Below are positions 28,809 to 62,057 of a stretch of DNA of 64,000 bases, piece after piece (positions within the stretch are counted from its first letter, which is position 1; each line of letters begins with the position of its first letter). Where the stretch lies: the IMG/VR virus record IMGVR_UViG_3300044974_001280, positions 124,001-188,000 of that record; one strand, written 5' to 3'. Below the pieces are notes generated by a model. It had not been told where the DNA came from and ran no database searches. It worked only from the letters and a program-made list of their open reading frames with translations. The position numbers and the translations under genes were made by a program.

Positions 28809-29069
28809 ATGAAAAAAATAGAACCAATAGACCTCCAAAAATTCCAGGAATTTGAGCAAGAAATTCTCCAACTTGAAGTTCCCCGTGTCAAGTACACTCC
28901 AGATTTAGAAATTCAGGCCGAAGTCAGAAGACAGGTCCTAGCTGAGAATTTCGGGGAAGAGAAGCTGGCCGAAGTTTTGGCTGCAACTGGATTCGAAGCC
29001 CGAGATCTAGGAGTAGATCACCTCTTTTTTCAAGTTAACAAAACCCTTCAAAATACCCTGGCCCAGTGA
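28809..29069 (+). CDS. Hypothetical protein
   Basis: 86-aa ORF after a GAAAT-type promoter. Confidence 0.55.
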   Translation: MKKIEPIDLQKFQEFEQEILQLEVPRVKYTPDLEIQAEVRRQVLAENFGEEKLAEVLAATGFEARDLGVDHLFFQVNKTLQNTLAQ

Positions 29070-29410
29070 GCAGTTTTACTAGAAACTTCGATTTGTCCGG
29101 TTGGGGATCTTCCTTTGAAGATCATCCACAACACGCCGTGCTGAAGAAAAATATCGATCGGGCAGTCCACGATATTTTTCTTCAGGCTCTGAGAGAGCAA
29201 CACAATGAATTCTTATCAATTTTCGAGTCCGAGAATAAAATCGAAGACTTTGTCAGCAGAACTCTGAAATATTGGGAGGAGGAAGAAAAATATGAAATTT
29301 GCGCCGAGATTCAAAAATTAAAAACGCAGGTCATTCAGAAATGGAAGGGGATGCCTCTCATAGATAAAACACAGGCCAAAAAATTAAGGGATTTTTTACA
29401 GGGTCTTTAA
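29066..29410 (+). CDS. Small protein with UVR-like motif
   Basis: [20 protein letters not shown]. Confidence 0.6.
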
Positions 29411-29415
29411 ACTGT

Positions 29416-30459
29416 ATGAAGAATTATTATCAAATTCTTGGGGTGACCAAAGAATCTACTCCGGAGGAAATCAAAAAGAATTACCGAAAGCTAGCTCTTC
29501 AATACCATCCAGATAAAAACAATCAGGATCCTGCTGCCGCCGAAAAATTCAAAGAAGTTTCTGAAGCCTATGAGGTTCTAAGCAATCCCCAAAAAAAGTC
29601 TCAATATGATCGGCCTGCGTCCCCATTTGGAAATCATCCTTTCCAGGGAGGAAGAGGACCATTCCAATGGGGATTTGGAGATCTTTTTAACAATTTTAAT
29701 AATAATACTACCTATAATGGAGGTATAAGAAGGGGCAAAAATATCACCGCAAAACTCCAGGTGACTCTAGAGGAGAGCATCAAGGGTTCTAAGAAGATCG
29801 TTAACATCTTTAGAAGATTGCCCTGCAATCCCTGTCAAGGAACTGGAGCTAAAGACGGTAAAATTAGAATCTGCCCTGCTTGCATGAGTTTGGGTTTCAT
29901 TAAAAAGGTCGTCAATACTGGATTTGGTCAAATGTCGATCGATGAAACCTGCTATACCTGTTCGGGGATCGGTGAGATAGCGGAAGAGCTTTGTATCTAT
30001 TGTACAGGATCTGGCACCATCAGAAAAACAGATCAGGTTGAAATAAAAATTCCCGCTGGATCCGTCTCTGGGATTTCTTTTAAACTGGATGGCAAAGGTG
30101 ATTTTGATAAAGTACCTTGCGATCCTGGGGATCTGATCGTCGTTGTAGAAGATATGGACCATCCATTTTACAAAAGAGATGGCATTAATTTAATCTGCGA
30201 CTGCGAGATCAACTTTGTTCAGGCTTGCCTTGGGACTGAAGTCAAAATCCCGAGTCTGGAAAATCCTGATCGTGAATATAAAATTTCTATTCCCCCGGGC
30301 ACGGATCCTGGTAAAATATTGAGACTGGCGGGGAAAGGTGTTCCTGAATTTAACACTGATTTTAGAGGAGATCTTCTGGTGAGAATTAAACTGCTAATTC
30401 CCAAGGAGCTGGATGAAACTCAGCGGGAATTTCTGGCTACATATCAAAAAATATTTTAA
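29416..30459 (+). CDS. dnaJ: Molecular chaperone DnaJ
   Basis: J domain with HPD, G/F region, four CxxC zinc-finger repeats, C-terminal domain. Confidence 0.95.
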
Positions 30460-30460
30460 G

Positions 30461-30823
30461 ATGTTTATTTATTCTTTTATAGGCTGGGGAATCACCAATC
30501 TTTTAGTCAATGGGTCTATTTTTGATGATATCAGAAATTACCTTCTCGTGATGCACCCTAAGTTGGGTAAACTCCTCACCTGTATGCAATGCTCTGGGTT
30601 TTGGGTAGGTGTACTTCTGGGTCTTTTTAATTTTGCCGGAATCATTGAGAACCCTTGGTCCGATTTTTTTCAATTTCAAGGGGAAACGGCAGGCAAAATC
30701 AGGCATTTTATAGAATTTTTGCTCCTTATTTTCACCTCGGGCGTTTGGATCAGCGGAGTGAGTGTCATCTTCAACACCCTCCTGATAACTTTTGCCAAAA
30801 TGGGAATGAAAAAAGAACTATAA
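30461..30823 (+). CDS. Membrane protein (DUF1360-like)
   Basis: Hydrophobic helices with LLTCMQCSGFW. Confidence 0.55.
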   Translation: MFIYSFIGWGITNLLVNGSIFDDIRNYLLVMHPKLGKLLTCMQCSGFWVGVLLGLFNFAGIIENPWSDFFQFQGETAGKIRHFIEFLLLIFTSGVWISGVSVIFNTLLITFAKMGMKKEL

Positions 30824-30849
30824 GGGATATATAAAGAAAAAAATCCCTC

Positions 30850-31920
30850 ATGAAATCATCTAAAGTTCTGAATTTTCAAGATTTTCTCGGTCTGTCAACG
30901 GACAGAATAACAGAGAATGAAAAAATTCAGGATATTTTAAAAGATGCCATTGGGGAAGTTGCCCCACTGATTCCCAAAACAGGGGGAGAAAGCGGTGGTC
31001 TAAAAGAACCAATTATCAAGTCAGGTAAAGATTTACAGAATATGTTTTGGTCTACCAGTATGGGCAAGAGATTTTTAGAAAAAACGGATGAAGATTATCG
31101 AAAGCAGATGTCCGAGAAAGGTCTCCTAGACAGCAAATATTTATCTGATGAAGGAACTGGATCAAGAAATGCACCTTCCGGCAATATCTCAAAGGAAAAA
31201 GAATTGCAAGATATGCTCGATAGAATGGGAATGGGAAAAAGTGGAGATATAGATTTCGGTAAGTTACCAGACGGAGGATCTTACGAATTTAGTGAGGCCA
31301 AAGAAATGGATTGGAGTGATCTCAGCCAACTATTGAAAAAAGAAGGAATCAAGTACCCGTCCGATAAATACACTCTTGTTGCTCTGAGAAACAACCTGGT
31401 GGTGAAGAAAAAAATGCCCAATCGTTTCACCGATGCACTTTTCTTACTAGGTCCCGACTCCAATAAAACAGTCCAATTTTATCCAGCCACCACCACACCT
31501 GGGCCAGCCTTTATGGTAAAAAGTTATCGGAATTTAATGGCTAGTAGGGGCAATGCTTCCGGCATTAACCCCAAGGGGCTAGCCATCATTCAACCGGGTG
31601 TTTATACCTATAAATTGGGTAAGCACAAAGGGAAAGAGGATGCATTAATCCAGGCAGAACCAGTCACGGTTCATAGATACACGCCAGTCGATTCTGAAAG
31701 TCAGGCAACATTTAAAACTTTTTCACCGGGCAATGAAGAAAAAGGTGAATTTGGAATCAACATTCATCAAGGAGCTGATATAGATACCGTCGATAACATT
31801 AGCAGTGGCTGTCTTGCCACCCAGTACAAAAAAGACATGAAAGAGATCATCAAGAAATTGAAAGATGCCGGCCAAGATCAGATCGAATTGGTTCTTTTAG
31901 ATCTAGATTCAATTAATTAA
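30850..31920 (+). CDS. Putative YkuD/L,D-transpeptidase-like murein-acting protein
   Basis: ATTTPG...PGVY...GINIH...SSGC; N-terminus VLNFQDFL; GATATATA 30826-30833. Confidence 0.5.
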   Translation: MKSSKVLNFQDFLGLSTDRITENEKIQDILKDAIGEVAPLIPKTGGESGGLKEPIIKSGKDLQNMFWSTSMGKRFLEKTDEDYRKQMSEKGLLDSKYLSDEGTGSRNAPSGNISKEKELQDMLDRMGMGKSGDIDFGKLPDGGSYEFSEAKEMDWSDLSQLLKKEGIKYPSDKYTLVALRNNLVVKKKMPNRFTDALFLLGPDSNKTVQFYPATTTPGPAFMVKSYRNLMASRGNASGINPKGLAIIQPGVYTYKLGKHKGKEDALIQAEPVTVHRYTPVDSESQATFKTFSPGNEEKGEFGINIHQGADIDTVDNISSGCLATQYKKDMKEIIKKLKDAGQDQIELVLLDLDSIN

Positions 31921-31977
31921 CGGCTCAAGGGGAAACTTCTTATCTGCAGGGCTGCTACAATCTGAAAAATTAAAATC

Positions 31978-33342: not shown

Positions 33343-33349
33343 AACACCT

Positions 33350-34018
33350 ATGTCTTACCTAAATCACAACATTCCAACCCTCACCTGTTTTATCAGAAAT
33401 GAATTCTTATTCAATCACGAAAAAGGACACGGGGATCTAACCCTAGCCGATGTTCATTCGGTGGCATCTATTCAGAAAAGAGTTCCTCTCTTCGAGGCAT
33501 TTCTAGAAAATGGGGTTAACTGGACCCGCCGGCCCATTCATGCCTTTTGTTGGCACCGTCAGGCCGAAGTTCTTCCCCTCAGTGAACACATGTACTGGGA
33601 CTGTTTCAGTTCTTACATTGACGTCCAGGTAAGAGAAAGGCTGTCGGGTCTCAGGGCCGATCTGATTTCGATCACGGGGCTCAAAAGGCAGGGTGTCTAT
33701 CTATTTACCTTGGACTGGTCCCACGAAAACAGAAGTGTTCTAGACACCAATTTCTCAGAAACCCCCGAACACAAGTGCGGACACGTTTTTAAAATGGACA
33801 ATGGTAATTTCTTTATCTACCCCAACAACAGAATCATCTGGATGGATAATGCCTGGACTTTTAACCGGATTGATAAAAATCCCGGCTACAAGATCGACAT
33901 GAGGGTCTATTCTATCGAAGGGAATGGTAAATATGAAACAGACTACCATTACTTCACAAATTTCTCAGAAAAAAAATCAGATTCTCTTTGCGATGCATCG
34001 AAAGAATCCTCCATCTAA
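33350..34018 (+). CDS. Conserved hypothetical phage protein
   Basis: YLNHNIP...RNEFL...EHKCGH...DNGN...PNNR. Confidence 0.65.
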   Translation: MSYLNHNIPTLTCFIRNEFLFNHEKGHGDLTLADVHSVASIQKRVPLFEAFLENGVNWTRRPIHAFCWHRQAEVLPLSEHMYWDCFSSYIDVQVRERLSGLRADLISITGLKRQGVYLFTLDWSHENRSVLDTNFSETPEHKCGHVFKMDNGNFFIYPNNRIIWMDNAWTFNRIDKNPGYKIDMRVYSIEGNGKYETDYHYFTNFSEKKSDSLCDASKESSI

Positions 34019-34044
34019 ACCCTATAATAAAAAAATCTAAATCC

Positions 34045-34806
34045 ATGAAAATTAGAGTAACCAGCACGAGTAATTTCATCCTTTTTCTCAAGAAGCTAAA
34101 AGTCGTCGACCGAAGCGTCTTGCTAGAATTAACAGAAACGGATCTTTTTTGTAAAGTTCACACCCCCGATAAATCTGTCATGAAATTCTCCAGAATTCCC
34201 ACTAATCTTATTTTTGATTCCTTAACTGAATTTTCAGCCCTTAAGTGTGACAGAATTAAAATAGGTCTGCTGGATATTACCAGACTGATGGATAGCTTCC
34301 GCTATTTTAGGTCGGAGGAGGAAGTTTTTTTACACCTGGAAATTGCCACTATTGATGATGAGTGTGTCGCAACGGAATTAAAATTGATCTCCCCCTCTCT
34401 GAAAATAAGGATCAAATGTGCTGATCTATCTTTGCTTTCTTATGTGGAGGATTCCATTTCTGATCTGGTTCAAAGTCAAGAAGATGCCTTGGCCAGTTTC
34501 AAATTTTTTGTTTCTGATTTCTCTTCTGTTTCTTCCCTCTGTGGAATGGAGTCCAACTCCGAAGAGCTGCTAAACTTCTCACTTCACTCGGACTACGTCA
34601 GAGTTATCGGAGAATCTTTTGACTATAAATTGACTATTGGAAGCTCTGACATAGATTGTGCCAAGCCCTTAGATGCTTCGATTTACAAATCACATTTGAA
34701 CTATGTAGATCCTGAATCATGCATTTGCTTCTTCCATGAGAACAGAATAGTCTTTGCCTCTGATCAAACCCCTACTTCCACCGCTATCGGCATTATCGAA
34801 AAGTAG
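34045..34806 (+). CDS. Probable DNA polymerase sliding clamp (gp45/PCNA-like)
   Basis: About 250 aa acidic alpha/beta pattern, early-type promoter, near polymerase and topoisomerase genes; no diagnostic motif. Confidence 0.45.
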   Translation: MKIRVTSTSNFILFLKKLKVVDRSVLLELTETDLFCKVHTPDKSVMKFSRIPTNLIFDSLTEFSALKCDRIKIGLLDITRLMDSFRYFRSEEEVFLHLEIATIDDECVATELKLISPSLKIRIKCADLSLLSYVEDSISDLVQSQEDALASFKFFVSDFSSVSSLCGMESNSEELLNFSLHSDYVRVIGESFDYKLTIGSSDIDCAKPLDASIYKSHLNYVDPESCICFFHENRIVFASDQTPTSTAIGIIEK

Positions 34807-35608
34807 AGAAATATCCCCTCATATTGCTCAGAATTTTCACTTTTTTCTTCGTATTGAGATCTAGAACTTTTTCTAGCTCCCGTCTGAAATTGGCAACTTC
34901 TGGATATTCCCAAAACATAGCTAGATCCACCATGCGATCTGGATTATCGACAATATAATTCTTCAAGAAATTTACATCTAAAAAAGGAAGGGTTGAAATC
35001 AGAGCTTCAATACGGGTAAAATTTTTGGATTTAGCTTCTTCTAAGGCTTGTATCCAACCTAGATAATTCCATTTACCTTCATTAAAATCGACCAAATCGG
35101 AGTAAAAACCTTTCTTCAATTTAACTGGAGCTCCTACCAAACTGGTTAAGGGATTACCAAAGGCCAAGTACTGCCCACCAACTTCAACAGGACCCCCAAC
35201 TAGATCTTTAAGATTGTTGTTGTTGCAAGAGAAATTCTTCCCTATTTTAGTAGGTCCTCCCTGCAAGGAGGTCAAAGAGTTATCGCTACAGTTGAAACTT
35301 CCTTGAACTTCTTGTGGAAATCCCTCTAGATCTTGAAAAAAATTTCTAGTGCAATAAAAAACCCCGGTCACCTTGCCAAATCCGATCCCCTTGAAAATAT
35401 CAATTTCCCGGGTCTGATTAAAAGGTTCAGAAAGATAAAAATTGCCTGTGATGTCCACCCTGTCAGTTTTCCTGTTCATTTCCCAGGTGCCAACAACGTG
35501 TTTATTTAAGATTTCTGTTTGCTTTCTGGACAATCTTGTGCCAGCTGCCCGATCTCCTTTTTTTGCCTCGAAAATTTTAAAACTTTGAATGGGGTTCTCC
35601 TTTTGCAT
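34793..35608 (-). CDS. Divergent LRR-like repeat protein, paralog 4
   Basis: Four xFxCxxNxLxxLxGxP modules and similar caps; IQSFKIFEA N-terminus; GATATATA 35613-35620. Confidence 0.75.
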   Translation of the reverse strand: MQKENPIQSFKIFEAKKGDRAAGTRLSRKQTEILNKHVVGTWEMNRKTDRVDITGNFYLSEPFNQTREIDIFKGIGFGKVTGVFYCTRNFFQDLEGFPQEVQGSFNCSDNSLTSLQGGPTKIGKNFSCNNNNLKDLVGGPVEVGGQYLAFGNPLTSLVGAPVKLKKGFYSDLVDFNEGKWNYLGWIQALEEAKSKNFTRIEALISTLPFLDVNFLKNYIVDNPDRMVDLAMFWEYPEVANFRRELEKVLDLNTKKKVKILSNMRGYFSTFR

Positions 35609-35671
35609 CAATTATATATCTAGGAATGGAAACAAACCAGCCTTCTAGCATAAAATAAACACAATCAAAAA

Positions 35672-36826
35672 ATGTCGTACGAAAATTTGTCCCAATCAGA
35701 ACTGCTTCAGAAAAAAGAAGAACTGACCGCTCTGAAAAACGAATATAAGAATGAAGAACAGGCGATCAAATTGACCATGAATTCTATCTATGGTTCGATT
35801 GGGAACAGTTATTTTGTGTGTTTCAACCACGAGGTAGCAGAAGCCGTTACCCTTCAGGGTCAGGATATGATTAAATATTCGGAGAAGATAGTCAACCGGT
35901 ACTTCCACGATTTTTGGCACGAGGACGTAGAACTGCACGAAAAATTAGGTCTAACTGAGGTTAAAAGAGTGGCCAAACCCCTTGTCATTTACTCTGATAC
36001 TGATTCCAACTATGTTACCTTTGAGGAAGTCGTTGCTTCCTGTGATTGGCAGGGTGATCCCAAAGAACTTATTCTTGCCATTAACGATTTAAGGCTGAAA
36101 AACTACATCAAAAAATGTTTTGATCTTTACTCTAAGAAATGGAACACTGAAAACTACCAGGACTTTGAACTTGAAACAATCTCAAAGAATGCTATTTTCT
36201 TGGGTAAGAAAAAATATGTCACCAATCAAGTCTATGCCGACGGGATACACTCGGATCCTCTGACTTTTATTAAAACAACAGGGGTAGAAATGATCAAGGG
36301 AGGAACCCCCACTTTTGTCAGAGAAAAACTTCTTTATTTGACGAAGTATATTCTGTCTGTGGGTAAAAACTTCAACCTTAGAGAATTTGTTCAGGAGTTA
36401 AAGAGCATTAAAAAAGATTTCAAGGCCCAAGAAGCCGAGCAGATCTCTCTCGCAATATCGGTTAACAACTACGAAAAATTCATCCTGAATGACACGACAA
36501 AACTCGAGGTGAGCAAGTCCTGTCCGATTCACGTTAGAGCCTCCGCTTTCCATAATTTTCTGCTAAACAACTCCAAGTACAAAGAGAAATATCCTCTTCT
36601 GAGATCTGGAGATAAAGTCAGATTTTATTTCGTGCCGGTTAGATCCGAGGCAGAGAACAACGTCTTTGCCTATTCCCAGGGTAATTTTCCCTATGAATAC
36701 GCACCCCCAGTCAACTACGACGAACAGTTCACCAAAACAATTCTAGATCCTATTAACAGATTTATCGAAGTAATGGGCTTTCACCCAATCAGTCCAAATC
36801 TTTTCATGATCAACACTCTTTTTTAA
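35672..36826 (+). CDS. Family B DNA polymerase, C-terminal subunit (motifs B and C, thumb)
   Basis: KLTMNSIYG, VTLQGQ, YSDTDS, KKKY, TTGVE. Confidence 0.9.
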   Translation: MSYENLSQSELLQKKEELTALKNEYKNEEQAIKLTMNSIYGSIGNSYFVCFNHEVAEAVTLQGQDMIKYSEKIVNRYFHDFWHEDVELHEKLGLTEVKRVAKPLVIYSDTDSNYVTFEEVVASCDWQGDPKELILAINDLRLKNYIKKCFDLYSKKWNTENYQDFELETISKNAIFLGKKKYVTNQVYADGIHSDPLTFIKTTGVEMIKGGTPTFVREKLLYLTKYILSVGKNFNLREFVQELKSIKKDFKAQEAEQISLAISVNNYEKFILNDTTKLEVSKSCPIHVRASAFHNFLLNNSKYKEKYPLLRSGDKVRFYFVPVRSEAENNVFAYSQGNFPYEYAPPVNYDEQFTKTILDPINRFIEVMGFHPISPNLFMINTLF

Positions 36827-36829
36827 CTT

Positions 36830-37012
36830 ATGGGTTACCACCACACAATTTTACCCGATCCTGATACTCTGAGCAAAATCAGGGAAAATTTGGGGGATGA
36901 TTCAAAATTCCTCCAACTGTACTGGTACTCTCCTGATGCTGTTCTAGGTTCTGAGTCCTCTTTGTCCTACCTCCGTCAAATTTTAGAAAAGCATGAACAA
37001 GTACCAGTTTGA
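36830..37012 (+). CDS. Hypothetical protein
   Basis: 60-aa ORF immediately after the polymerase stop. Confidence 0.5.
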   Translation: MGYHHTILPDPDTLSKIRENLGDDSKFLQLYWYSPDAVLGSESSLSYLRQILEKHEQVPV

Positions 37013-37244
37013 AGATATTGCGGATGAAGAATTCGAGGCATATTGCCAGTATATGGACGAGACCTACCATCTGTTAGAAGAAAACCGTTTTTTGTTTATA
37101 AGTGATAAAAGTCTCTCCCCTTCTTTCAAATGTGAGAGGTTGGAAGAGCTGGTTGATTTCTTCACTTTGGAGGAACAGTACGAGAAATGTGCAGTGCTTC
37201 ACAAAATCAGAATAGCGGTGGAAATCGAATTCTTGATGCAGTAA
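36993..37244 (+). CDS. Small protein with UVR-like motif
   Basis: LVDFFTLEEQYEKCAVLHKIR. Confidence 0.6.
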   Translation: MNKYQFEDIADEEFEAYCQYMDETYHLLEENRFLFISDKSLSPSFKCERLEELVDFFTLEEQYEKCAVLHKIRIAVEIEFLMQ

Positions 37245-37301
37245 ACCATCTAATTTTTTCAGAGTTCTAGATATATAGAACATCTAAAAAAAATTCTCTG
37301 G

Positions 37302-38768
37302 ATGAATTCACTACCCGCCGTGTTAAATTTTTGCAACTTCTTGAACGAATCTAAAGAAGAAAAAGGAGTTGAACTCCTGATCCTCTCAGGCACGGTAAAA
37401 CCCAGTCCGACGTCCAAATCCTTCCTGGAGGAATGCCAAAAAAGGGGTATCCCTTGTTACGTTGTCAACATCAACAATGTGCAGCTTGAAAAAATCTATA
37501 ATGGACATCTACTCCGGGAGACCTCAGGGGACAAAAGAGAAATTTTCATAAATCCTGATGTGACCGCTATTATTCCTAGACGAGGGGTTATTTCCAATTC
37601 TCTGACCAAACAGATCATGAGAGAATTAGAAGCATCCCGTTATTTCTGTGTCAATTCTCTGGAATCTATCGAGGTGTGTGAGAGTAAATTCTTAACCTCA
37701 AAGGTGTTGGAAGAGAATGAACTTCCAGTTCCCAGATATGCCCTGGTGAACGGGGAAGAAAATCTGGATACTGCCTTGGAACAAATAGGTGGTCAGTTTC
37801 CTGTAGTAATGAAGTTGCTCTCGGGCACTCAGGGCATTGGGGTTTCAATTGTTGATTCTTACGCCTCTCTGAAATCTGTGTATCAAACGATTGCCAAATT
37901 GGATCCCGAAAAGGAAATTCTTATTCAGGAAAAAATTGACTCGAACTTTGATTTGAGAATTCAGGTCATCCTCAAAAGATTTGACCCTTTAATCACCAAA
38001 CCAAGCAATTGCATTATTCTTGGATCCATGAAAAGAGAAGCAGTAAAAAAGGATTTCAGAACCAATTACTCTCTAGGAGGTAAAGTTTCTGCCTATAATA
38101 TAGATGATAAAATTGCCGATTTAGCCTGTCGGGCTGCTAATTCTGTCGGTAGCCATTGGTGCGGGGTAGACATCATGATCGATAAAAAAACGAAAGAGCC
38201 GTATATTCTGGAGGTTAATTCCTCGCCTGGAACAGAAGGCATCTCTCAGGCCATAGGAAGACCCATTGTGGGGGACGTCATCGATTATGTCATCAATAAA
38301 AAGAATTGGATCTACTCTAGGATGGAGGTTGGTTATTTAGAGACGATTGAGATCCCAGAGATAGGAAAGCTTGTTGCCAAATTCGACACTGGAAATGGCT
38401 CCAGTGCCTCATCGATTCAGGCAGATGAAACGAAAGAAGTAGGAAATCAGCTGAAGTGGAAAATCGGGGGCAAAGAATTTACCAGCGACATTGTTGGTTA
38501 CACCGATACGGAAGTGGGTAGAGATAAAAGCAAGAGACCTATTATTCTGCTAGACGTCATGCTCAACGGGGTAAAGATCTCGGATGTAAAAGTTGCTCCC
38601 ACGGATAGGGTCCAAAAAAGCACTCCATTCCTGGCCAGCAGAGGCCTGATGAAAAAAATGGGGGTAATGGTTAATCCACACAAAGCCTTTGTCGTCACCG
38701 AGGAGATTAAAGGTTATAGACCTTTGAAAGCCAAAGGCAAACCCCATCTTGGCATTGAATTTTCTTAA
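37302..38768 (+). CDS. RimK-family ATP-grasp ligase fused to a retropepsin-like (RimB-type) protease
   Basis: FPVVMKLLSGTQGIGV, IQE, DLR, FRTNYSLGG, GVD, LEVNSSPG; C-terminal AKFDTGN; N-terminus VLNFCNFLNE. Confidence 0.85.
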   Translation: MNSLPAVLNFCNFLNESKEEKGVELLILSGTVKPSPTSKSFLEECQKRGIPCYVVNINNVQLEKIYNGHLLRETSGDKREIFINPDVTAIIPRRGVISNSLTKQIMRELEASRYFCVNSLESIEVCESKFLTSKVLEENELPVPRYALVNGEENLDTALEQIGGQFPVVMKLLSGTQGIGVSIVDSYASLKSVYQTIAKLDPEKEILIQEKIDSNFDLRIQVILKRFDPLITKPSNCIILGSMKREAVKKDFRTNYSLGGKVSAYNIDDKIADLACRAANSVGSHWCGVDIMIDKKTKEPYILEVNSSPGTEGISQAIGRPIVGDVIDYVINKKNWIYSRMEVGYLETIEIPEIGKLVAKFDTGNGSSASSIQADETKEVGNQLKWKIGGKEFTSDIVGYTDTEVGRDKSKRPIILLDVMLNGVKISDVKVAPTDRVQKSTPFLASRGLMKKMGVMVNPHKAFVVTEEIKGYRPLKAKGKPHLGIEFS

Positions 38769-38795
38769 AGATATATAAACCAAATAATAAACAAC

Positions 38796-38978: not shown

Positions 38979-38986
38979 TTCTAGGA

Positions 38987-39481: not shown

Positions 39482-39500
39482 AGTTTTTGGTTTTTAATTC

Positions 39501-39512
39501 AGATATATATCT
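39501..39512. promoter_or_regulatory. Palindromic bidirectional GATATATA promoter
   Basis: AGATATATATCT perfect palindrome between divergent genes. Confidence 0.65.
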
Positions 39513-39516
39513 CACT

Positions 39517-39843: not shown

Positions 39844-39853
39844 AATAAATTAT

Positions 39854-41305: not shown

Positions 41306-42322
41306 TTATTTTATGTAATCAGAGATTTCCATCATTTTATCAAAATCTCCCTCCTCGTCGGCCTTTCTGTATTCCCTTTTTAGTTCTTCTTGGGACATAC
41401 TAGCGTAATCTTTGGTGATCTGTGATTCTGAACCACTTGGGGATTTGGCAGCTTGTCTGGCTTTCCATGCTGCTAATTTCCTTTCATACTCAGCCTTATC
41501 GGCTCTATCCTGCTCCAGCCAGGCATCTCTGGCTTCCACCCTCTCAATGACTACATCAATCAATTCATCGATTTTTTTTCTGGCTTCTGGAGTTTTTCTA
41601 AAAATTCCTGTCATCAGAGGTAAAAATTCAGCCGTGGGTAAATTCTCTGGATCCACCATATATTTCCAAAGTTCCTCTCTCAAATTAGAATATTTGATGA
41701 CCTTGGGATTCTCAAAGATAAATTTTCTTAGATCTTCGGCCATTTGAGGACCATATCTCCATTCGTCCGGTTCGTCTATCAATCCGAATTGATCTTCAAT
41801 AGCCTTGGCTAGTTCAGGGTCATCTGGTACTGCAGACATTGACATAACCCTCCAAATTCCTTTGACTGCCTCATGAATCAGCATGCTGAAATCCGCTCCT
41901 AAAGCTTTAATTACTGGTTTAGAATCCGGTCGAGGTCTGTTTTTTTGTCTTGTTTTTCTAAAGCTGTCATCCAACATCCTCCTTATTTCTGGTCCCTGTA
42001 CTAGTTTAATTTCAAGCTTTATGTCGTAGTAATCAATGAGGGGCTTGTATAGATCTGTAATTATTTCTCTTGCTAGATCTTCTAGCTCCTTTTCATACCC
42101 TCTAGAAAGTTGCTGGGATCTCGAAAAATTTCCCATCAACTGGCTAACGGCTTGGCTGATTCCTTGCGGGGATCCCTCGGGAGTTTTCCCGATGCCGAGT
42201 TTTTCTTTAGCTCTTCTCGTGACATCCTCTAGGTAGTCGGGGGGAATACTCACCATGTCTTTAACCCTAATAGCCTCATTAAAGGATGCAAAATTCTTTG
42301 TGAAATTGGCTTTTAGTGACAT
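41306..42322 (-). CDS. Hypothetical protein with HExxK motif and C-terminal UVR-like helix pair
   Basis: LIHEAVKG; C-terminal LKREYRKADEEGDFDKMMEI; N-terminus NFASFNE. Confidence 0.6.
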   Translation of the reverse strand: MSLKANFTKNFASFNEAIRVKDMVSIPPDYLEDVTRRAKEKLGIGKTPEGSPQGISQAVSQLMGNFSRSQQLSRGYEKELEDLAREIITDLYKPLIDYYDIKLEIKLVQGPEIRRMLDDSFRKTRQKNRPRPDSKPVIKALGADFSMLIHEAVKGIWRVMSMSAVPDDPELAKAIEDQFGLIDEPDEWRYGPQMAEDLRKFIFENPKVIKYSNLREELWKYMVDPENLPTAEFLPLMTGIFRKTPEARKKIDELIDVVIERVEARDAWLEQDRADKAEYERKLAAWKARQAAKSPSGSESQITKDYASMSQEELKREYRKADEEGDFDKMMEISDYIK

Positions 42323-42326
42323 ATTC

Positions 42327-44792
42327 TTAGTAAAATGGTTTTCTTTTTTTGAGTTCTGATATGTACCTTTTGATCACATCCATCTCTGAAGCTTTTTTCT
42401 TTATTGCTTGGGGTCCAGGAGCATGAGAAGGAACTTTAATTCGTGGTGCAATTGACGGATGAGGAGTTATTCTTCGGACCGGTTCTGCATCTGGATCAAA
42501 ATCCTCATCCTCATCTTCATCCTCACTGGGTGTAGGTTTAGGAGTAGGCTTAGGCTGTGGTTTAGGCGTAGGTTTAGGCAGTGGTTTAGGCAGTGGTTTA
42601 GGCAAAGGAGCTGGTTTTCCCTTTTCCTCTTCTTTCTCCCTTTCTGTTTCCGCCTCGTCTAATCTATCGCTAAATTCTGAAAAACTATTGATTCTTCTAG
42701 GACTTGTAGATTCGAACAAAGAAAAACTTTTGTGGATTTTTCTGAGTCTAGATTCAGATAACTCTGAAATTTTCTTTCCGTTAATGACTAACTCATCTGC
42801 CAAGGAATCGTAATCAATTTTGAGGTTGGATCCTTCCTCAATCTCTTCCTCGATTATAAAATTGGCTAGAGGGTCCTTGATATATTTCTCCACTGCTCTT
42901 CTAAGGGGTCTAGCCCCATATTCAGGGTCAAATCCGTGTTTAAGTAACAACTTGTAAACCGAAGTTCCCCAAGTCAGATTAATGTCTTGGGTATTTTTAA
43001 TCCTATCTGCCACCTTCTCGAGCTCTTTTTCTGCAATCTTTTTTATTGATTCTTGGTCTATTGACTGAAAAATAACAATATCATCTATTCTATTAATAAA
43101 TTCGGGCGAAAACTCTTTTTTGATCGCTGCATCGACTCTTGCTTTGATTTCCTCAGGTGATTCTGCTCCAGTCTGTTTTGTTTCATCTTCTGGTTCATCT
43201 TTAACCAAAAAACCAATCGCTTTTCTGGGTTCCTTTGATTTAACCTTTTTAGATCCTGTTTTTGATCCCACATTAGAAGTCATGATAATAACACAGTTTG
43301 TAAAGTCAACCGTTCTCCCTTGCCCGTCCGTCATCCTTCCATCTTCTAGCACCCCTAGCAGGGATTGTATAACTTGAGGGTTTGCTTTTTCGATCTCATC
43401 TAGCAAAATTACCGAATAAGGGTTTCTTCTGACTTGCTCTGTTAGTTTGCCTCCTTCCGAATAACCTACATAACCGGGAGGTGATCCAAACAATTTAGAT
43501 CCTGTATGAGCCTCCGAATATTCATTCATATCAATCCTAATCAATTTAGATTCCCTAGATCCAAAAAGCTCCTCAGCCAATTTTTTCACCAAATAGGTTT
43601 TACCTGTCCCAGTAGGGCCCACGAATAAAAATACCCCTTCAGGTCTATTAGGGTCTTTAAGACCCGACCTGTTTCTTTTAATTGTTCTAACAACGGTCTC
43701 TACCGCCTCGTCTTGACCGATAACTTTTGATTTCAGTCTGCTTGACATTCCTTTTAGGATTGCCTTACTGCCCTTTTTCATCGTTTCAACAGGAATCCCT
43801 GTTTTATCTGCCACTAGTTTTTCCACCATTTCTTTAGTGACGGTAATTTTAGGTCCCATTTGACCTTTCGCAGCCATTTTTTCAAGCCGACTCTCTATCT
43901 TTTCTTTTTCATCTGATAGATCTGCAGCAGCATCATAGTCACCTTCTGCCGTCTTTTGCCTGATCCGGTCTAGGAGTTCTAAATTTTTCTTTTCTAGATT
44001 CGCAACCTCCGCATCCGGGGCATTTTTAATGCGAATTCGTGCACCGGATTCGTCCATCAAGTCGATAGCTTTATCTGGCAAAAATCGGTCTTTAATATAC
44101 TGCTTAGATAGTTTATAAAAGGATTCTAAGGCTTCTGGTGAATAATTAACATGATGCCAATCCCCATATTTTTCTTGGATTTCTCTAAGTATTTCCATGC
44201 ATTCCTCGTAGGTAGGCTCTTCAACTTTGATCGGTTGAAATCTTCTTTCCATGGCTCCGTCTTTCTCAATAGTTTGACCATATTCACTATAAGTGGAACC
44301 ACCGATCATATGAAGTTTGGCTTTAGCCAAAAAGGGTTTGAGTTCATCGTAACTTGCTTTAGGTAGAGAATGGAGTTCGTCCACAAAAATAATCAAGTTA
44401 TCTTCCTCAATTTCACGGGCCAAAAGGGGTAAATAACCTCCATTAACTATTTTTTTAAATGCCCAGGTCAAATCTATTAACTTTTTCCCCTTTAAAAAAC
44501 CGGGACATTTATCGCTTGCCATTAAAAGAGCAAGCTTATCCACAATAGCGGTTTTTCCAACGCCCGGCTCTCCAACCAAAACTGGATTATCCTTGGTTTT
44601 CCTGGCCAGAATGCGAAGCAACTGTTCCAATTCCTTATCCCTTCCAATTACTTCATTTATCTCTCCCTCCTTCGCTGCTTTGGTCATATCCTCACCGTAT
44701 GCTTGCCAAAGCTTTTCATCATCTGGGACTTTTAGTTCTTCCTCAGATTCGAATAATCTTAATTTTTTGTAATTCTTGGATATTCTTTTCAT
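42327..44792 (-). CDS. ClpC/ClpA-like Hsp100 AAA+ ATPase lacking the Clp N-domain
   Basis: GEPGVGKT/FVDE, RFLPDKAID, UVR-like M domain, GPTGTGKT, PPGYVGY, LLDEIEKA, IGF loop, GARPLRR. Confidence 0.9.
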   Translation of the reverse strand: MKRISKNYKKLRLFESEEELKVPDDEKLWQAYGEDMTKAAKEGEINEVIGRDKELEQLLRILARKTKDNPVLVGEPGVGKTAIVDKLALLMASDKCPGFLKGKKLIDLTWAFKKIVNGGYLPLLAREIEEDNLIIFVDELHSLPKASYDELKPFLAKAKLHMIGGSTYSEYGQTIEKDGAMERRFQPIKVEEPTYEECMEILREIQEKYGDWHHVNYSPEALESFYKLSKQYIKDRFLPDKAIDLMDESGARIRIKNAPDAEVANLEKKNLELLDRIRQKTAEGDYDAAADLSDEKEKIESRLEKMAAKGQMGPKITVTKEMVEKLVADKTGIPVETMKKGSKAILKGMSSRLKSKVIGQDEAVETVVRTIKRNRSGLKDPNRPEGVFLFVGPTGTGKTYLVKKLAEELFGSRESKLIRIDMNEYSEAHTGSKLFGSPPGYVGYSEGGKLTEQVRRNPYSVILLDEIEKANPQVIQSLLGVLEDGRMTDGQGRTVDFTNCVIIMTSNVGSKTGSKKVKSKEPRKAIGFLVKDEPEDETKQTGAESPEEIKARVDAAIKKEFSPEFINRIDDIVIFQSIDQESIKKIAEKELEKVADRIKNTQDINLTWGTSVYKLLLKHGFDPEYGARPLRRAVEKYIKDPLANFIIEEEIEEGSNLKIDYDSLADELVINGKKISELSESRLRKIHKSFSLFESTSPRRINSFSEFSDRLDEAETEREKEEEKGKPAPLPKPLPKPLPKPTPKPQPKPTPKPTPSEDEDEDEDFDPDAEPVRRITPHPSIAPRIKVPSHAPGPQAIKKKASEMDVIKRYISELKKRKPFY
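42529..42610 (-). repeat. 12-bp tandem repeats encoding a PKP(L/T/Q) linker
   Basis: ggtttaggcagt-type units. Confidence 0.8.
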
Positions 44793-51920: not shown

Positions 51921-51921
51921 C

Positions 51922-53810: not shown

Positions 53811-53821
53811 ATTTTTTAAGA

Positions 53822-54982: not shown

Positions 54983-54987
54983 CATTT

Positions 54988-55392: not shown

Positions 55393-55402
55393 AATAAAAA
55401 AA

Positions 55403-56044: not shown

Positions 56045-56051
56045 AAGAATT

Positions 56052-57964: not shown

Positions 57965-57965
57965 C

Positions 57966-58700: not shown

Positions 58701-58711
58701 AAATAAACAGC

Positions 58712-58993
58712 ATGCAAATCCCCCCTAAAAGAATCAGAAAGCCAGAGGATTCTCTGATGAAACATTATCAGGAACAATACGTCAGAAATCAAAACAAGTG
58801 GATTCGAAGATCCAAACTCTTGCCAGAACACTTAGATCAAGAATTTCTATTGGAAGGTGAAAAATACTGTCTTCGGGGTAGTACCAGTCCCGTTCAAGTT
58901 GTGGTTGAAAAAAAATCCACCTCCGAATACTTTATCATGTCCATTGATCCCGTTACAAAATCAATTTTAGGAGAGCCAGAAGTTGAAGATTAA
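58712..58993 (+). CDS. Hypothetical protein
   Basis: 93-aa ORF. Confidence 0.5.
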   Translation: MQIPPKRIRKPEDSLMKHYQEQYVRNQNKWIRRSKLLPEHLDQEFLLEGEKYCLRGSTSPVQVVVEKKSTSEYFIMSIDPVTKSILGEPEVED

Positions 58994-59224
58994 GATTCTT
59001 ACCACCTCGCCCAGAACACATCTGGAAGTTTGTTCCCTTATTAATCTTCATAAGGTTGAAATCTTAGAAAACAAATTTGATGAAGAAGGATTTTATAGTT
59101 TTTTTTTACTAGAAAGTCTACCTATCTACGTTGATGATTTTATTCTAATTCCCGACATAAAAGTTCACTGGAACAAGGAAATCCAGTAAAAAATGAGTCC
59201 TGATGCAGATATATAATCTCAGTT

Positions 59225-59626
59225 ATGGAAACTCAAAAACCGATTTCAGAGATCATCAGGGAGGTTTTACAGGATGAATTAAACTCTATGAGGGAAAGAT
59301 CTCCAGGCCACGATCTAAGGATCATCCAGATCAGCATGGAGGAACTCAAAGCAGCTCAGTCTGAAATGAAAAAAGATCTCTCGGAGCTAAAGAAAAAACT
59401 TCTGGATCCAGATGATGGTGTGATCGTCAAAGTAAACGAAAACACCAAATTCAGACTAGAACAACAGAGACAGAAGGAGAAAGATGAGGTTGAATACCGG
59501 AACCTCTTACTAGAACACTCTGACCTCATGAAGTGGAAAGGGGGGATCACCAAAGCTATGTGGATCTTTTTCACCACTTTGGTTGGGATTTTAGCAAAAA
59601 TCTTTTTCCTATCTGATACAAATTAA
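59225..59626 (+). CDS. Coiled-coil protein with C-terminal TM helix
   Basis: LLDPDDGVIVKVN; C-terminal AMWIFFTTLVGILAKIFF; GATATATA 59208-59215. Confidence 0.6.
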   Translation: METQKPISEIIREVLQDELNSMRERSPGHDLRIIQISMEELKAAQSEMKKDLSELKKKLLDPDDGVIVKVNENTKFRLEQQRQKEKDEVEYRNLLLEHSDLMKWKGGITKAMWIFFTTLVGILAKIFFLSDTN

Positions 59627-59635
59627 AAAAACACC

Positions 59636-59821
59636 ATGTCAAATCCACAAACAGTTGCTCCAGACCCTAAACACACCACCGACGATAATTTCGTCAAGTG
59701 GTACGATCAAAGGGCTTACAGTTCGAAAGTTGGCTCTCTGGGTATGAAGCAGGCCACGGTTGGTAAGCTCATGAAGTTTGAAGAGTTCAAAAAGACTTTC
59801 TCGAGCCTCCAATCTAAATAA
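59636..59821 (+). CDS. Small protein with C-terminal targeting-like motif
   Basis: LMKFEEFKK. Confidence 0.55.
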   Translation: MSNPQTVAPDPKHTTDDNFVKWYDQRAYSSKVGSLGMKQATVGKLMKFEEFKKTFSSLQSK

Positions 59822-59913
59822 TTTTTCTTTACAATTTCTTTCAATACCCTTGAAAAATTGAAATTTTTTGAATTTTTGGGCTATAAACAGGAGTTCATTA
59901 AAACAAATTTAAC

Positions 59914-60966
59914 ATGAAATTAAAATTGGAGTATGTTTGGTTAGATGGATATCAACCCGAACCAAATTTGAGATCAAAAGTAAAGATTTTCGATTATACC
60001 CCGTCAAATCTGAACACTCTTTCGCCCCAACACGCAAAACCTAGACCAGAAGAACTTCCAGAATGGTCTTTTGATGGAAGTTCCACCCGGCAGGCTGAAG
60101 GTAATTTCTCAGATTTGATTCTAAAACCAGTGAGGGTTTATGCAGATCCTCTCAGAATGGGCTTTTGCTATCTCGTAATGTGTGAGGTTCTAAATCCAGA
60201 CCGCACCCCACATTCTTCCAATACTAGAGCCTTGATCGGAAAGGATTCTCATGCTCTTTGGTTTGGGTTTGAGCAAGAGTATGTGCTCAGGTGGTTCAAT
60301 AAAAATAGTAATCGGCCGGTAGGATTTGAAAATTTCAACCCACCCGAGTCTCAGGGCAAGTATTATTGTTCAGTCGGTCATCCTTATTCCGCTGGCAGAA
60401 ATATTTCAGAGGAACATTTGGATGCCTGTCTTTCTTGTGGCATTCAGATCACAGGCACCAATGCCGAAGTGATGCTCGGTCAGTGGGAATATCAGGTTTT
60501 TGGCCAGGGAGAACAGACGGCCGCAGATGATCTTTGGATATCTAGATTTTTGCTCATGAGAATTGCAGAAAATTACCAGATCAAAGTTGACTTTCACCCC
60601 AAGCCCATGGGAGCAGAGGAAGATTGGAACGGATCAGGAATGCACACCAATTTTTCAAATAATAGAATGAGAGAAACAGGAGGGGAAGAATTTTTTAACA
60701 GCATTTGTCAAGTGCTGGAAAAAACCCACGATGTTGCTATTTCCCTCTATGGATCGGACAATCATCTGAGACTTACCGGCAAGCACGAAACCCAAAGCAT
60801 TTCGAAATTCAGTTGGGGTGTAAGTGATAGAGGAGCATCAATCAGAATACCCATTTCTACCTCTGATAAGTGGTTGGGTTATCTTGAAGACAGGAGACCA
60901 GGATCAAATGCGGATCCTTATAAAATCACCAAATATCTCTCCAACTCTCTCGAGGAATTAGAATAA
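59914..60966 (+). CDS. glnA: Glutamine synthetase (type II-like)
   Basis: LEYVWLDG, WSFDGSST, FGFEQEY, NAEVM.GQWEYQV, HPKP...WNGSGMHTNFS, RLTGKHET, DRGASIRIP, YLEDRRP. Confidence 0.95.
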   Translation: MKLKLEYVWLDGYQPEPNLRSKVKIFDYTPSNLNTLSPQHAKPRPEELPEWSFDGSSTRQAEGNFSDLILKPVRVYADPLRMGFCYLVMCEVLNPDRTPHSSNTRALIGKDSHALWFGFEQEYVLRWFNKNSNRPVGFENFNPPESQGKYYCSVGHPYSAGRNISEEHLDACLSCGIQITGTNAEVMLGQWEYQVFGQGEQTAADDLWISRFLLMRIAENYQIKVDFHPKPMGAEEDWNGSGMHTNFSNNRMRETGGEEFFNSICQVLEKTHDVAISLYGSDNHLRLTGKHETQSISKFSWGVSDRGASIRIPISTSDKWLGYLEDRRPGSNADPYKITKYLSNSLEELE

Positions 60967-60975
60967 ACTAAATTC

Positions 60976-61287
60976 ATGTACGATTCCCACCCGCCGTTCA
61001 AAGAAGCACTTCAGTTCAAAGATAAAGACAGATTTTGGGAACTCTTCCGTGAAAAGATTACCGAAGCTGTAGAACAAAGGTATAATTTCGCAGTTCTTTT
61101 TACGATGGGTCAAGATTTCAACACGGATGGTCCCAGCTATTCCGTAATCATTGAGAAAAAAGACTATGAAAAATTCCTTGTCAACTGCCAACTCTGGAAC
61201 GAAAGGACTGAAAATTACGAGGCGTGTGGGCAAATAAAAAAAACTTTACAACTTCTAAAAAAATGGAAAACTCAGGATTTAGACTAA
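60976..61287 (+). CDS. Small protein with UVR-like motif
   Basis: WNERTENYEACGQIKKTL. Confidence 0.6.
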   Translation: MYDSHPPFKEALQFKDKDRFWELFREKITEAVEQRYNFAVLFTMGQDFNTDGPSYSVIIEKKDYEKFLVNCQLWNERTENYEACGQIKKTLQLLKKWKTQDLD

Positions 61288-61487
61288 TCAGTTCACACTA
61301 CTTGAACGATATGAGAATAGAAAAGGGTGACATCTTAAGAGAGAAATCTTCCCAAAAAACTGTCAAGGTATTGAATGTACTTAAAAATAATGAAGGGAAA
61401 GTGGAGTTACTGGTGGAATATAATGCTCCAGGCTCTTTTGGAGTGCCCTTTCAAAAATCGCCGGATAGCTTTCAATTTCTGACCTAA
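61263..61487 (+). CDS. Hypothetical protein
   Basis: Short beta-rich ORF. Confidence 0.45.
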   Translation: MENSGFRLISSHYLNDMRIEKGDILREKSSQKTVKVLNVLKNNEGKVELLVEYNAPGSFGVPFQKSPDSFQFLT

Positions 61488-61582
61488 AAAATTCTGGCAA
61501 GAAAGATTGCTGTAAATTGTCTTTTGCACTTTAAACTCAGAAAATTCATTCTGGTCAAAACATATATACTTCTGAATCAGAA

Positions 61583-61825
61583 ATGAAAAATCATCAGAAT
61601 ATAGACCGATTGAATAGGGCTTTAGAAGTCTATAGTGACATCGTAAAATTTGGCGAGAAAAGTCTTGCCTTTTCCCAGCGGGAAGAATGTATTAAAGTTT
61701 TAGAAGATTTCGAGGAATATGAAAAATGTATGGATCTTCATCAGATCCACCCAGTAGAGCGCACCCAGTCTAAACTGAAAAAAAATGATTCAGAATTTGA
61801 AAACCGAACCGAGGATAGAGCGTAA
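61583..61825 (+). CDS. Small protein with UVR-like motif
   Basis: VLEDFEEYEKCMDL. Confidence 0.6.
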   Translation: MKNHQNIDRLNRALEVYSDIVKFGEKSLAFSQREECIKVLEDFEEYEKCMDLHQIHPVERTQSKLKKNDSEFENRTEDRA

Positions 61826-62057
61826 GGTGTACGAAAAAGCCTTATCTAGAATGGAAAAAATGGGCAGCAGCGCCATTAACCATCCTCATCTTCTCGAAAA
61901 GAGAGAAGACATTAAAGCTAGTTTGTTGAGATACTATGAGTCGACAGAGGAGTATGAAAAATGTCAGTACATCACAAACTTTTTCGCCAAGCTGGAGAAA
62001 GATATTCTACTCAGTCAAATTTTAACCTTGACCAAAGAATCAAAAACCGAGAAATAA
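61785..62057 (+). CDS. Small protein with UVR-like motif
   Basis: LLRYYESTEEYEKCQYI. Confidence 0.6.
   Translation: MIQNLKTEPRIERKVYEKALSRMEKMGSSAINHPHLLEKREDIKASLLRYYESTEEYEKCQYITNFFAKLEKDILLSQILTLTKESKTEK

What the first reader, a model, noticed from the sequence alone, without database searches (positions are those of the whole stretch)
29066..62057. Family of small UVR-motif proteins: candidate Clp adaptors
Seen: five otherwise unrelated 80-115 aa proteins share E-x-Y-E-x-C-x-x-(I/L) after an amphipathic helix: [11 protein letters not shown] (29066), LEEQYEKCAVL (36993), RTENYEACGQI (60976), DFEEYEKCMDL (61583) and STEEYEKCQYI (61785). Related motifs occur in the phage ClpC M-domain (AEGDYDAAADL) and at the C-terminus of its downstream gene (EEGDFDKMMEI). 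Established: the UVR helical hairpin (E.FE.AA.LRD) dimerises with other UVR domains, is present in the ClpC M-domain and McsA, and M-domain contacts control ClpC activation. Inference: each protein couples a different N-terminal substrate-binding part to a UVR handle that docks on host or phage ClpC, giving a modular targeted-degradation toolkit.
Basis: partly seen in the sequence, partly recalled or inferred. Interest (0 to 1): 0.75.

Follow-up and report, generated by a model that had tools for sequence, protein, structure and literature searches.

The report
Phage family of UVR-like EEYEKC hairpins
Five small genes of an uncultured 230-kb lake phage belong to a large, unannotated, apparently virus-only protein family whose C-terminal helical hairpin looks like a diverged UVR motif of the ClpC/McsA kind, but whether it docks on the Clp protease is still only a hypothesis.

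Summary
All five ORFs exist as described. The motif E-x-Y-E-x-C-x-x-[IL] occurs exactly five times in all six frames of the whole 230,445-bp phage genome, only in these ORFs, against 0.08 expected.

It is more than a shared motif. It is the core of a ~35-residue helical hairpin, with consensus L..hI.[YF]FE..EEYEKCA.LKKI. The hairpin ends small proteins (45-215 aa) whose N-termini are unrelated.
- Orthologues at 44-65% identity keep the motif invariant.
- Related phages carry 3-6 copies each.
- An exhaustive profile search finds 105 clusters at 50% identity, and a word-indexed search finds 1,352 clusters at 90% identity.
- More than 120 IMG/VR contigs carry the motif. No member has a Pfam, PHROG or PDB annotation.

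The UVR reading is partly supported.
- Pfam UVR is not reached.
- Profile-profile comparison aligns the hairpin in register with real UVR domains, best with the ClpC/McsA subtype (P 4e-4, probability 36%).
- Intermediate members exist (EEYEKCSILRD scores 17.5 bits on Pfam UVR).
- The same phage group also encodes small proteins that do pass Pfam UVR, with the same layout.

The Clp-adaptor function is untested. A close relative with six copies has no phage ClpC in its 88%-complete record, and the phage has no ClpP. The host is unknown.

The parts
29066..29410 (+). Family member A (114 aa). The motif E-K-Y-E-I-C starts at 29285. It sits directly upstream of the phage DnaJ gene.
   Evidence: Orthologues at 44-53% identity keep the order UvdE - (orf86, not found in one relative) - A - DnaJ in four relatives.
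36993..37244 (+). Family member B (83 aa). The motif starts at 37173. It lies after the PolB fragment and a 60-aa ORF.
   Evidence: Orthologues are found in three of four relatives.
60976..61287 (+). Family member C (103 aa). The motif starts at 61210. It consists of a helix, a beta-hairpin and the helical hairpin, and lies directly after glutamine synthetase.
   Evidence: AF2 pLDDT is 79.9, with the hairpin formed by H61-77 and H81-100. There are 64 clusters of homologues, none annotated.
61583..61825 (+). Family member D (80 aa). The motif starts at 61712. It overlaps E by 41 nt.
61785..62057 (+). Family member E (90 aa). The motif starts at 61947. It is predicted to be all-helical (four helices).
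   Evidence: AF2 pLDDT is 83.7, with H40-53, a loop at 54-56 and H57-88.
42327..44792 (-). Phage ClpC-like AAA+ ATPase (821 aa). It has no Clp_N domain, a degenerate UVR motif at the M-domain tip (GDYDAAADLSD), an AIGF ClpP-docking-type loop and a Pro/Lys-rich acidic tail. It is a candidate partner only.
41306..42322 (-). 338-aa gene downstream of the ClpC-like gene, with a C-terminal UVR-like ending (EEGDFDKMMEISDYIK). It is a candidate partner only.
   Evidence: It is conserved, with its C-terminus, next to the ClpC-like gene in relative G001.
29416..30459 (+). Full-length DnaJ (J domain, zinc-finger domain and C-terminal domain). It is the conserved downstream neighbour of member A.

Best explanation
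The five genes are paralogous only in a ~35-residue C-terminal module, a helix-loop-helix hairpin with the near-invariant core F-E-x-x-E-E-Y-E-K-C. This module defines a large, unannotated family that appears restricted to phages, found mainly in low-GC aquatic phages, many of them large.

The module is most likely a diverged UVR-type hairpin. Its tip (EEYEKC-A) differs by one residue from EE[FY]EKAA. In 13 Bacillota genomes that heptapeptide occurs only at the ClpC M-domain tip and in McsA.

Shown: the family is real and under selection, the hairpin is predicted with confidence, the N-terminal parts vary, and the link to UVR is remote but in register.

Inferred: the hairpin acts as a protein-protein docking or pairing surface, as UVR hairpins do, and brings different N-terminal parts to one common partner or to each other. 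A Clp/Hsp100 M-domain or McsA-type hairpin of the host is the leading candidate partner, but the partner is not identified.
For: Motif statistics.

Conservation: orthologues at 44-65% identity keep E-x-Y/F-E-x-C invariant, and relatives have 3-6 copies.

Size of the family:
- 105 clusters at 50% identity with E <= 1e-3; nearly all are 45-215 aa with the module at the C-terminus.
- 1,352 clusters at 90% identity.
- More than 120 IMG/VR contigs carry the DNA pattern, against about 3.5 that I estimated by chance.

Structure: AF2 predicts the hairpin in two paralogues, with block-mean pLDDT of about 83-96 over it.

Link to UVR:
- hhalign against 36 real UVR domains scores 15.3 and runs gapless over 31 columns, pairing YEKC with FE.AA. 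Column shuffles give mean 5.6 and maximum 9.1.
- Against the ClpC/McsA subtype the score is 17.8 (P 3.7e-4, probability 36%). Against UvrB/UvrC it is 14.9, and against TPR_1 it is 10.8.
- Bridging members exist: EEYEKCANIRD, and EEYEKCSILRD, whose only Pfam hit is UVR (E 0.0035, 17.5 bits).
- Atlas neighbours with any Pfam family carry UVR.
- Contigs with family members also carry small UVR proteins that pass Pfam and have the same layout.
- EE[FY]EKAA hits 7 of 7 times inside ClpC or McsA UVR sites.

Literature: the F, R and D residues of this motif make the ClpC M-domain head-to-head contacts, and the F is needed for MecA binding (PMC5699869). Five UVR-domain proteins are trapped by chloroplast CLPC1 (PMC8889267).
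Against: - Pfam UVR is not matched by the five proteins, the genome or 104 representatives.
- HMMER in both directions gives at most 7 bits, and hhalign probability is only 17-36%.
- Real UVR subtypes match each other at P 4e-13, so this family is far outside normal UVR variation and convergence is possible.
- The R and D contact residues of the ClpC tip are mostly K-K.
- Fold searches return only generic helical bundles, TPR and MIT.
- In the models the hairpin is part of one compact domain (pTM 0.68-0.70). Its hydrophobic face may therefore be occupied within the molecule.
- There is no binding, expression or host evidence. No RNA run was listed.
Confidence: 0.55

Rival explanations
1. Each protein is a Clp adaptor or regulator: the hairpin docks on the M-domain of the host or phage ClpC and delivers whatever the N-terminal part binds, or it opens the resting state.
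For: - The tip motif is one residue from the ClpC/McsA-specific EE[FY]EKAA, and the best profile match is to the ClpC/McsA subtype.
- The M-domain tip residues are the known contact and MecA-binding site.
- UVR proteins are CLPC1 interactors in plants.
- Clp-type ATPases occur in this phage, in relative G001 and in 4 of 30 fragmentary contigs that carry the motif.
- The phage ClpC-like protein has an IGF-type loop.
Against: - G002 (219 kb, 88% complete) has six copies and no Clp ATPase in the record. A 97%-complete 59-kb phage also has none.
- The genome has no ClpP.
- The phage's own M-domain tip (GDYDAAA) is less like the family motif than bacterial ClpC is.
- The R and D contact residues are missing.
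- There is no similarity to MecA, ClpS or other adaptor families.
- The host, and whether it has ClpC, is unknown.
Confidence: 0.2
2. The hairpin is only a stable structural cap reused by many unrelated small phage proteins. Its likeness to UVR is convergent, and there is no common partner. The members have diverse, unrelated functions.
For: - The models show the hairpin within one compact domain together with the N-terminal elements.
- S/T-x-E-E before the helix is a classical helix-capping pattern (my own knowledge).
- Statistical support for UVR homology is weak.
- Fold searches are generic.
Against: - Six consecutive residues, four of them charged, are near-invariant across more than 100 clusters whose other parts are unrelated. 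That is more than a fold usually needs.
- Bridging sequences with the full UVR signature exist.
Confidence: 0.15
3. The hairpin pairs with the UVR domains of host UvrB or UvrC and interferes with or redirects nucleotide excision repair.
For: - UVR domains mediate UvrB-UvrC pairing (the Pfam/InterPro description quoted in PMC8889267).
- The genes sit among replication and repair genes: UvdE, topoisomerase II, PolB and an Mre11-like exonuclease.
- hhalign against the UvrB/UvrC subtype scores 14.9, P 0.002.
Against: - The match is weaker than to the ClpC/McsA subtype.
- The tip has E-E where UvrB/UvrC have L-[ED].
- The location among early and replication genes is typical of many small phage genes.
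Confidence: 0.05
4. The invariant cysteine is functional. It could form a metal bridge, a disulfide or a redox switch between two or more hairpins, in the manner of a zinc hook or CsoR.
For: - Cys is present in 139 of 139 hits even when its column is neutralised in the profile.
- A weak shape match to CsoR-type metal repressors (TM 0.47/0.55).
Against: - There is only one conserved Cys and no conserved His per protein.
- The Cys occupies the position of the equally invariant first Ala of FE.AA, on the hairpin's inner face, so a packing role is enough to explain it.
Confidence: 0.05

Closest known systems
UVR domain (Pfam PF02151), ClpC M-domain / McsA subtype
   Same: - A helix-loop-helix of about 35 residues with the same spacing of hydrophobic positions.
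- A gapless, in-register profile alignment.
- An aromatic-Glu pair at the start of helix 2 and a small residue at +3.
- The tip EEYEK is identical to many McsA and ClpC sequences.
- It occurs at the end of small proteins with varied partner domains.
   Different: - Cys replaces the first Ala.
- R-D at +7/+8 is mostly K-K.
- An aromatic residue (F/Y) replaces Ala at -6.
- It is below every Pfam and HMMER threshold, and hhalign probability is at most 36%.
- It was found only in viral or metagenomic sequence.
Small phage proteins and BFN(DUF151)+UVR proteins that pass Pfam UVR, on family-bearing contigs (L239, L242, L245)
   Same: - They lie on contigs that also carry family members, and have the same layout: a variable N-terminus and a C-terminal hairpin.
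- Their tips are similar (ETENYEIAALIRD against RTENYEACGQIKK).
   Different: They keep A-A and R-D and pass the Pfam cut-off (22.7-36.6 bits). The family in the window does not.
ClpC adaptors (MecA, McsB/McsA, ClpF, phage SPO1 Gp53)
   Same: They are small proteins proposed or shown to act on ClpC. MecA contacts the same M-domain tip residue, F436.
   Different: There is no sequence or fold similarity to any of them, and binding has not been tested. SPO1 Gp53 is cited from my own memory only.
TPR / MIT helical hairpins
   Same: They are antiparallel helix pairs with a G/E-D/E-Y-E/D-x-A turn, and they top the non-significant Foldseek lists.
   Different: The hhalign score is lower (10.8, 12 columns, out of register), there is no Pfam TPR hit, and the unit is single rather than repeated.

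Membership tests
UVR domain (Pfam PF02151) | Reaches the Pfam gathering score (21.5 bits) | tested here: not met
   No hit at E <= 10 for the five proteins or the whole genome. None of 104 representatives appears under UVR at E <= 1 among the families listed. The best family member elsewhere scores 17.5 bits.
UVR domain (Pfam PF02151) | Helix-loop-helix hairpin of about 35 residues | tested here: met
   AF2 gives H40-53, a loop and H57-88 in E, and H61-77, a loop and H81-100 in C, with block-mean pLDDT of about 83-96 over the hairpin. These are predictions, not solved structures.
UVR domain (Pfam PF02151) | Signature [FY]-E-x-A-A-x-[LIV]-R-D | tested here: not met
   The Y/F-E pair and the L/I at +6 are kept. 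A-A becomes C-A or C-x, and R-D is K-K in the largest share of 316 sequences carrying [YF]E.C. Only 6 of the 316 keep R-[DE].
UVR domain (Pfam PF02151) | Profile-profile similarity to real UVR domains | tested here: inconclusive
   hhalign scores 15.3-17.8, P 1.5e-3 to 3.7e-4, probability 17-36%, in register. Shuffles reach at most 9.1 and TPR scores 10.8. Real UVR subtypes score 49.7 against each other.
UVR domain (Pfam PF02151) | Pairs with another UVR hairpin | not testable with these tools
   No multimer prediction or binding assay was available.
Clp/Hsp100 adaptor proteins | Binds ClpC (N-domain or M-domain) and changes its activity or substrate choice | not testable with these tools
   This needs pull-downs, ATPase assays and degradation assays.
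Clp/Hsp100 adaptor proteins | Homology to a known adaptor family (MecA, ClpS, YjbH, McsB) | tested here: not met
   No such Pfam family at E <= 10 and no PDB sequence match for the family profile.
Clp/Hsp100 adaptor proteins | Co-occurs with a Clp ATPase in the same phage | tested here: inconclusive
   A Clp ATPase is present here, in G001 and in 4 of 30 fragments. None was found in the record of G002 (six copies, 88% complete) or of a 97%-complete 59-kb phage. The host ClpC cannot be assessed.
TPR | Matches TPR profiles, with repeated 34-residue units | tested here: not met
   No Pfam TPR hit. hhalign scores 10.8 over 12 columns. The unit is single.

The most novel reading that the evidence does not exclude
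The EEYEKC hairpin mimics the tip of the ClpC/McsA-type UVR hairpin. By inserting into M-domain contacts it would either release the host ClpC from its resting state or tether the variable N-terminal part, and whatever that binds, to the unfoldase. Large aquatic phages would then carry a multi-copy, exchangeable set of natural targeted-degradation adaptors or Clp deregulators.
Probability: 0.17. Interest if true: 0.85.

Novelty: new variant of a known kind. Interest (0 to 1): 0.6.

Why it matters
If the hairpin is a UVR-type docking surface, this would be a large group of UVR-like proteins for which I found no annotation or description, and they are phage proteins. There are more than 1,300 sequence clusters, several copies per genome, and each copy has a different N-terminal part.

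That would give a concrete, testable entry point into how large aquatic phages take over host proteostasis or repair. It would also provide a natural set of small tags for recruiting proteins to an AAA+ machine.

Even without a known function, the family deserves a domain entry. It currently leaves thousands of phage ORFs labelled 'hypothetical'.

Tried and rejected
Searches that found nothing:
- Pfam and PHROG scans of the five proteins gave nothing above threshold. The only lead is a weak hit to phrog_13627, of unknown function.
- A PDB sequence search with the family profile found nothing.
- Foldseek against PDB and AFDB, and VIA-wide, returned only generic helical matches, none of them specific or significant.
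- BFVD returned only uncharacterised proteins of uncultured phages.
- tblastn of three members against 50,697 cultured-phage records gave no real hit.
- A profile search of Pelagibacter phage HTVC008M, Prochlorococcus phage P-SSM2 and Synechococcus phage Syn9 found nothing.
- Cluster look-ups gave no organism names, and short contigs gave little context.
- No RNA run was listed.
- Literature searches for phage UVR proteins and for the role of the McsA UVR domain found nothing relevant.

Technical failure: the search for related loci with the five-segment alignment failed because it had no conserved 7-10-column stretch.

Readings rejected:
- TPR, because its profile score is lower and out of register.
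- A chance motif, on the statistics and the orthologue conservation.
- Dependence on the phage's own ClpC, because G002 has six copies and no Clp ATPase in its record.


Full report
**Setting**

The window is bases 124,001-188,000 of a 230,445-bp IMG/VR virus record with 39.8% G+C, estimated 85% complete by CheckV. Near-identical sequence is held by at least 20 lake-water metagenome runs, and no RNA run was listed. The region encodes a T4-like replication and repair set:
- topoisomerase II subunits, UvdE, a clamp-like protein, a PolB fragment and an Mre11-like exonuclease;
- a full-length DnaJ, a glutamine synthetase, a RimK-like ATP-grasp enzyme and a ClpC-like ATPase.

**The observation**

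The five ORFs and their quoted peptides are present. E.YE.C..[IL] occurs five times in all six frames of the whole genome, only in these ORFs and always in their C-terminal third. Composition predicts 0.08 occurrences, and shuffles gave at most 1. The N-terminal parts are not detectably similar to each other. An HMM built from the five motif segments finds only these five in the genome, plus a marginal sixth with Ala in place of Cys at G000:44599-45135.

**It is a real family under selection**

Related IMG/VR contigs hold orthologues of C, D and E in tandem at 48-65% identity, and orthologues of A and B at 35-53% identity in conserved gene order. E-x-Y/F-E-x-C is invariant in every one. Relatives have 3-6 copies each.

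An exhaustive profile search of 1.84 billion representatives found 105 with E <= 1e-3. One of these is a spurious repeat protein. Nearly all the rest are 45-215 aa, with the module about 20 residues from the C-terminus and with diverse N-termini. The consensus is L..hI.[YF]FE..EEYEKCA.LKKI.

A word-indexed search with 36 short members found 1,352 clusters at 90% identity, from JGI, ENA, Logan and Tara data. None of the top 120 has a Pfam domain or an informative name. Those loci have a median G+C of 31%, and many are 11-34%-complete pieces of 40-75 kb, which implies very large genomes.

With the Cys column neutralised in the profile, all 139 hits in about 1.2 Mb of phage DNA still carry Cys. 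No cultured phage was found to carry a member.

**Structure**

AlphaFold2 was run with orthologue alignments.
- E: mean pLDDT 83.7, pTM 0.68, with helices 13-30, 34-38, 40-53, a loop at 54-56 (T-E-E) and helix 57-88.
- C: mean pLDDT 79.9, pTM 0.70, with a helix, two strands, helix 61-77, a loop at 78-80 and helix 81-100.

In both models the hairpin belongs to one compact domain. Fold searches gave only generic or uncharacterised matches.

**Is it a UVR domain?**

By the family's own yardstick it is not. There is no Pfam UVR hit for the five proteins, for the genome, or among the families listed for 104 representatives.

I collected real UVR domains from UvrB, UvrC, ClpC and McsA of bacterial genomes. 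HMMER in either direction gives at most 7 bits, although the three best-ranked targets of the family HMM are McsA, McsA and ClpC.

Profile-profile comparison gives a weak but specific signal.
- Against 36 UVR domains the score is 15.3 (P 0.0015). The alignment runs gapless over 31 columns at low stringency and pairs YEKC with FE.AA.
- 100 column shuffles gave a mean of 5.6 and a maximum of 9.1, and the reversed profile scored 6.7.
- Against the ClpC/McsA subtype the score is 17.8 (P 3.7e-4, probability 36%). Against UvrB/UvrC it is 14.9.
- A TPR_1 control scored 10.8 over 12 columns, out of register.
- The two real UVR subtypes score 49.7 against each other.

Four further lines point the same way.
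- Some members keep the rest of the signature. EEYEKCANIRD occurs in six related sequences, one of them seen on 44 contigs, and EEYEKCSILRD occurs in another. That protein scores 22.9 bits on the family HMM, and its only Pfam hit is UVR (E 0.0035, 17.5 bits, profile positions 3-33 of 36).
- For three paralogues, the nearest atlas clusters that carry any Pfam family carry UVR. A structural neighbour of C (TM 0.69/0.67 over 91 residues) is a viral cluster in which 13% of members pass Pfam UVR. The tool calls these scores leads only.
- Contigs that carry family members also encode small proteins that pass Pfam UVR and have the same layout. One has the tip ETENYEIAALIRD, and another is a BFN(DUF151)+UVR protein. 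Three of their Clp ATPases also pass.
- The heptapeptide EE[FY]EKAA occurs seven times in 13 Bacillota genomes. All seven fall inside ClpC or McsA UVR sites. I assigned these from ORF sizes and operon spacing, so the assignment is an inference.

I conclude that the module is probably (about 0.7) a diverged UVR hairpin closest to the ClpC/McsA kind. It is not a member of the family as currently defined.

**Function**

Nothing here tests binding. In S. aureus ClpC, residues F436, R443 and D444 are positions 0, +7 and +8 of this motif. [quoted passage not shown] In chloroplasts, five UVR-domain proteins are enriched in CLPC1 traps (PMC8889267).

Several findings count against a simple version of the idea.
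- The family lacks the R-D pair.
- The phage's own M-domain tip, GDYDAAADLSD, which aligns with NEEFEKAAALRD, is less like the family motif than bacterial ClpC is.
- Relative G002 has six copies but no Clp ATPase in its 88%-complete record, and a 97%-complete 59-kb phage also has none.
- The phage has no ClpP and no DnaK.
- The host is unknown.

Other leads are the conserved pairing of member A with DnaJ (one clade only) and the position of C, D and E upstream of the Mre11-like exonuclease.

I therefore commit to a UVR-type docking or pairing hairpin that carries variable N-terminal parts, with a host ClpC/McsA-type hairpin as the leading but unproven partner.

**Novelty**

I found no annotation or description in Pfam, PHROGs, PDB, BFVD names or the paper library. 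It is a new variant of a known kind of module.

Noticed in passing
window 42327-44792 (-): The phage ClpC-like ATPase lacks the Clp_N domain and has an AIGF loop of the ClpP-docking type. It ends in a tail of about 160 aa with PKP repeats and an acidic run. Neither ClpP nor DnaK is found in the 85%-complete genome.
   Followed up: partly
window 41306-42322 (-): The 338-aa gene just downstream of the ClpC-like gene is conserved with it in relative G001 at 54% identity. This includes a C-terminal UVR-like ending (EE.DF....h.D[FY]hK). It has no known family and is a better positional candidate for a ClpC partner than the five small genes.
   Followed up: partly
window 34793-35611 (-): This 272-aa gene is on the minus strand within a long run of plus-strand genes. 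It has repeated F.C..N.L.SL.G.P units and no Pfam hit. It is absent from four relatives, where the clamp-like gene and PolB are adjacent, so it looks like a strain-specific insertion.
   Followed up: partly
window 29416-30459 (+): A full-length DnaJ (J domain, CXXCXGXG zinc finger and C-terminal domain) sits in a conserved unit UvdE - (orf86, not found in one relative) - member A - DnaJ - orf136 in four relatives.
   Followed up: partly
window 61583-62057 (+): Genes D and E overlap by 41 nt. D has a tail about 11-15 residues longer than its 65-69-aa orthologues, which end before E starts.
   Followed up: no
G000:C1:44599-45135 (outside the window; locus L232): A 178-aa ORF ends in ...KAISQEKYEIAQKIQEILK. 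This is an Ala-type UVR-like hairpin resembling the Pfam-positive phage UVR tips (ENEEYEIASQIRD). It has no significant Pfam hit.
   Followed up: partly
locus L239 (G026:C1:59740-62832): A 178-kb contig that carries the family encodes a 196-aa protein ending in a UVR domain that passes Pfam (36.6 bits). I judged its N-terminal part to be bifunctional-nuclease (DUF151)-like by eye and did not test this. If so, it shares the architecture of the plant CLPC1 interactors UVR2-4.
   Followed up: no
window 35672-36826 (+), 37302-38768 (+), 59914-60966 (+): The PolB ORF covers only part of the polymerase profile, so the gene may be split. The RimK-like ATP-grasp has an extra C-terminal region of about 150 aa. 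A 350-aa glutamine synthetase is also encoded.
   Followed up: no
window 33350-34018 (+): The 222-aa ORF between topoisomerase subunit A and the clamp-like gene lies elsewhere in relative G002, next to the RimK-like gene. It was not found in three other relatives, which points to a local rearrangement.
   Followed up: no
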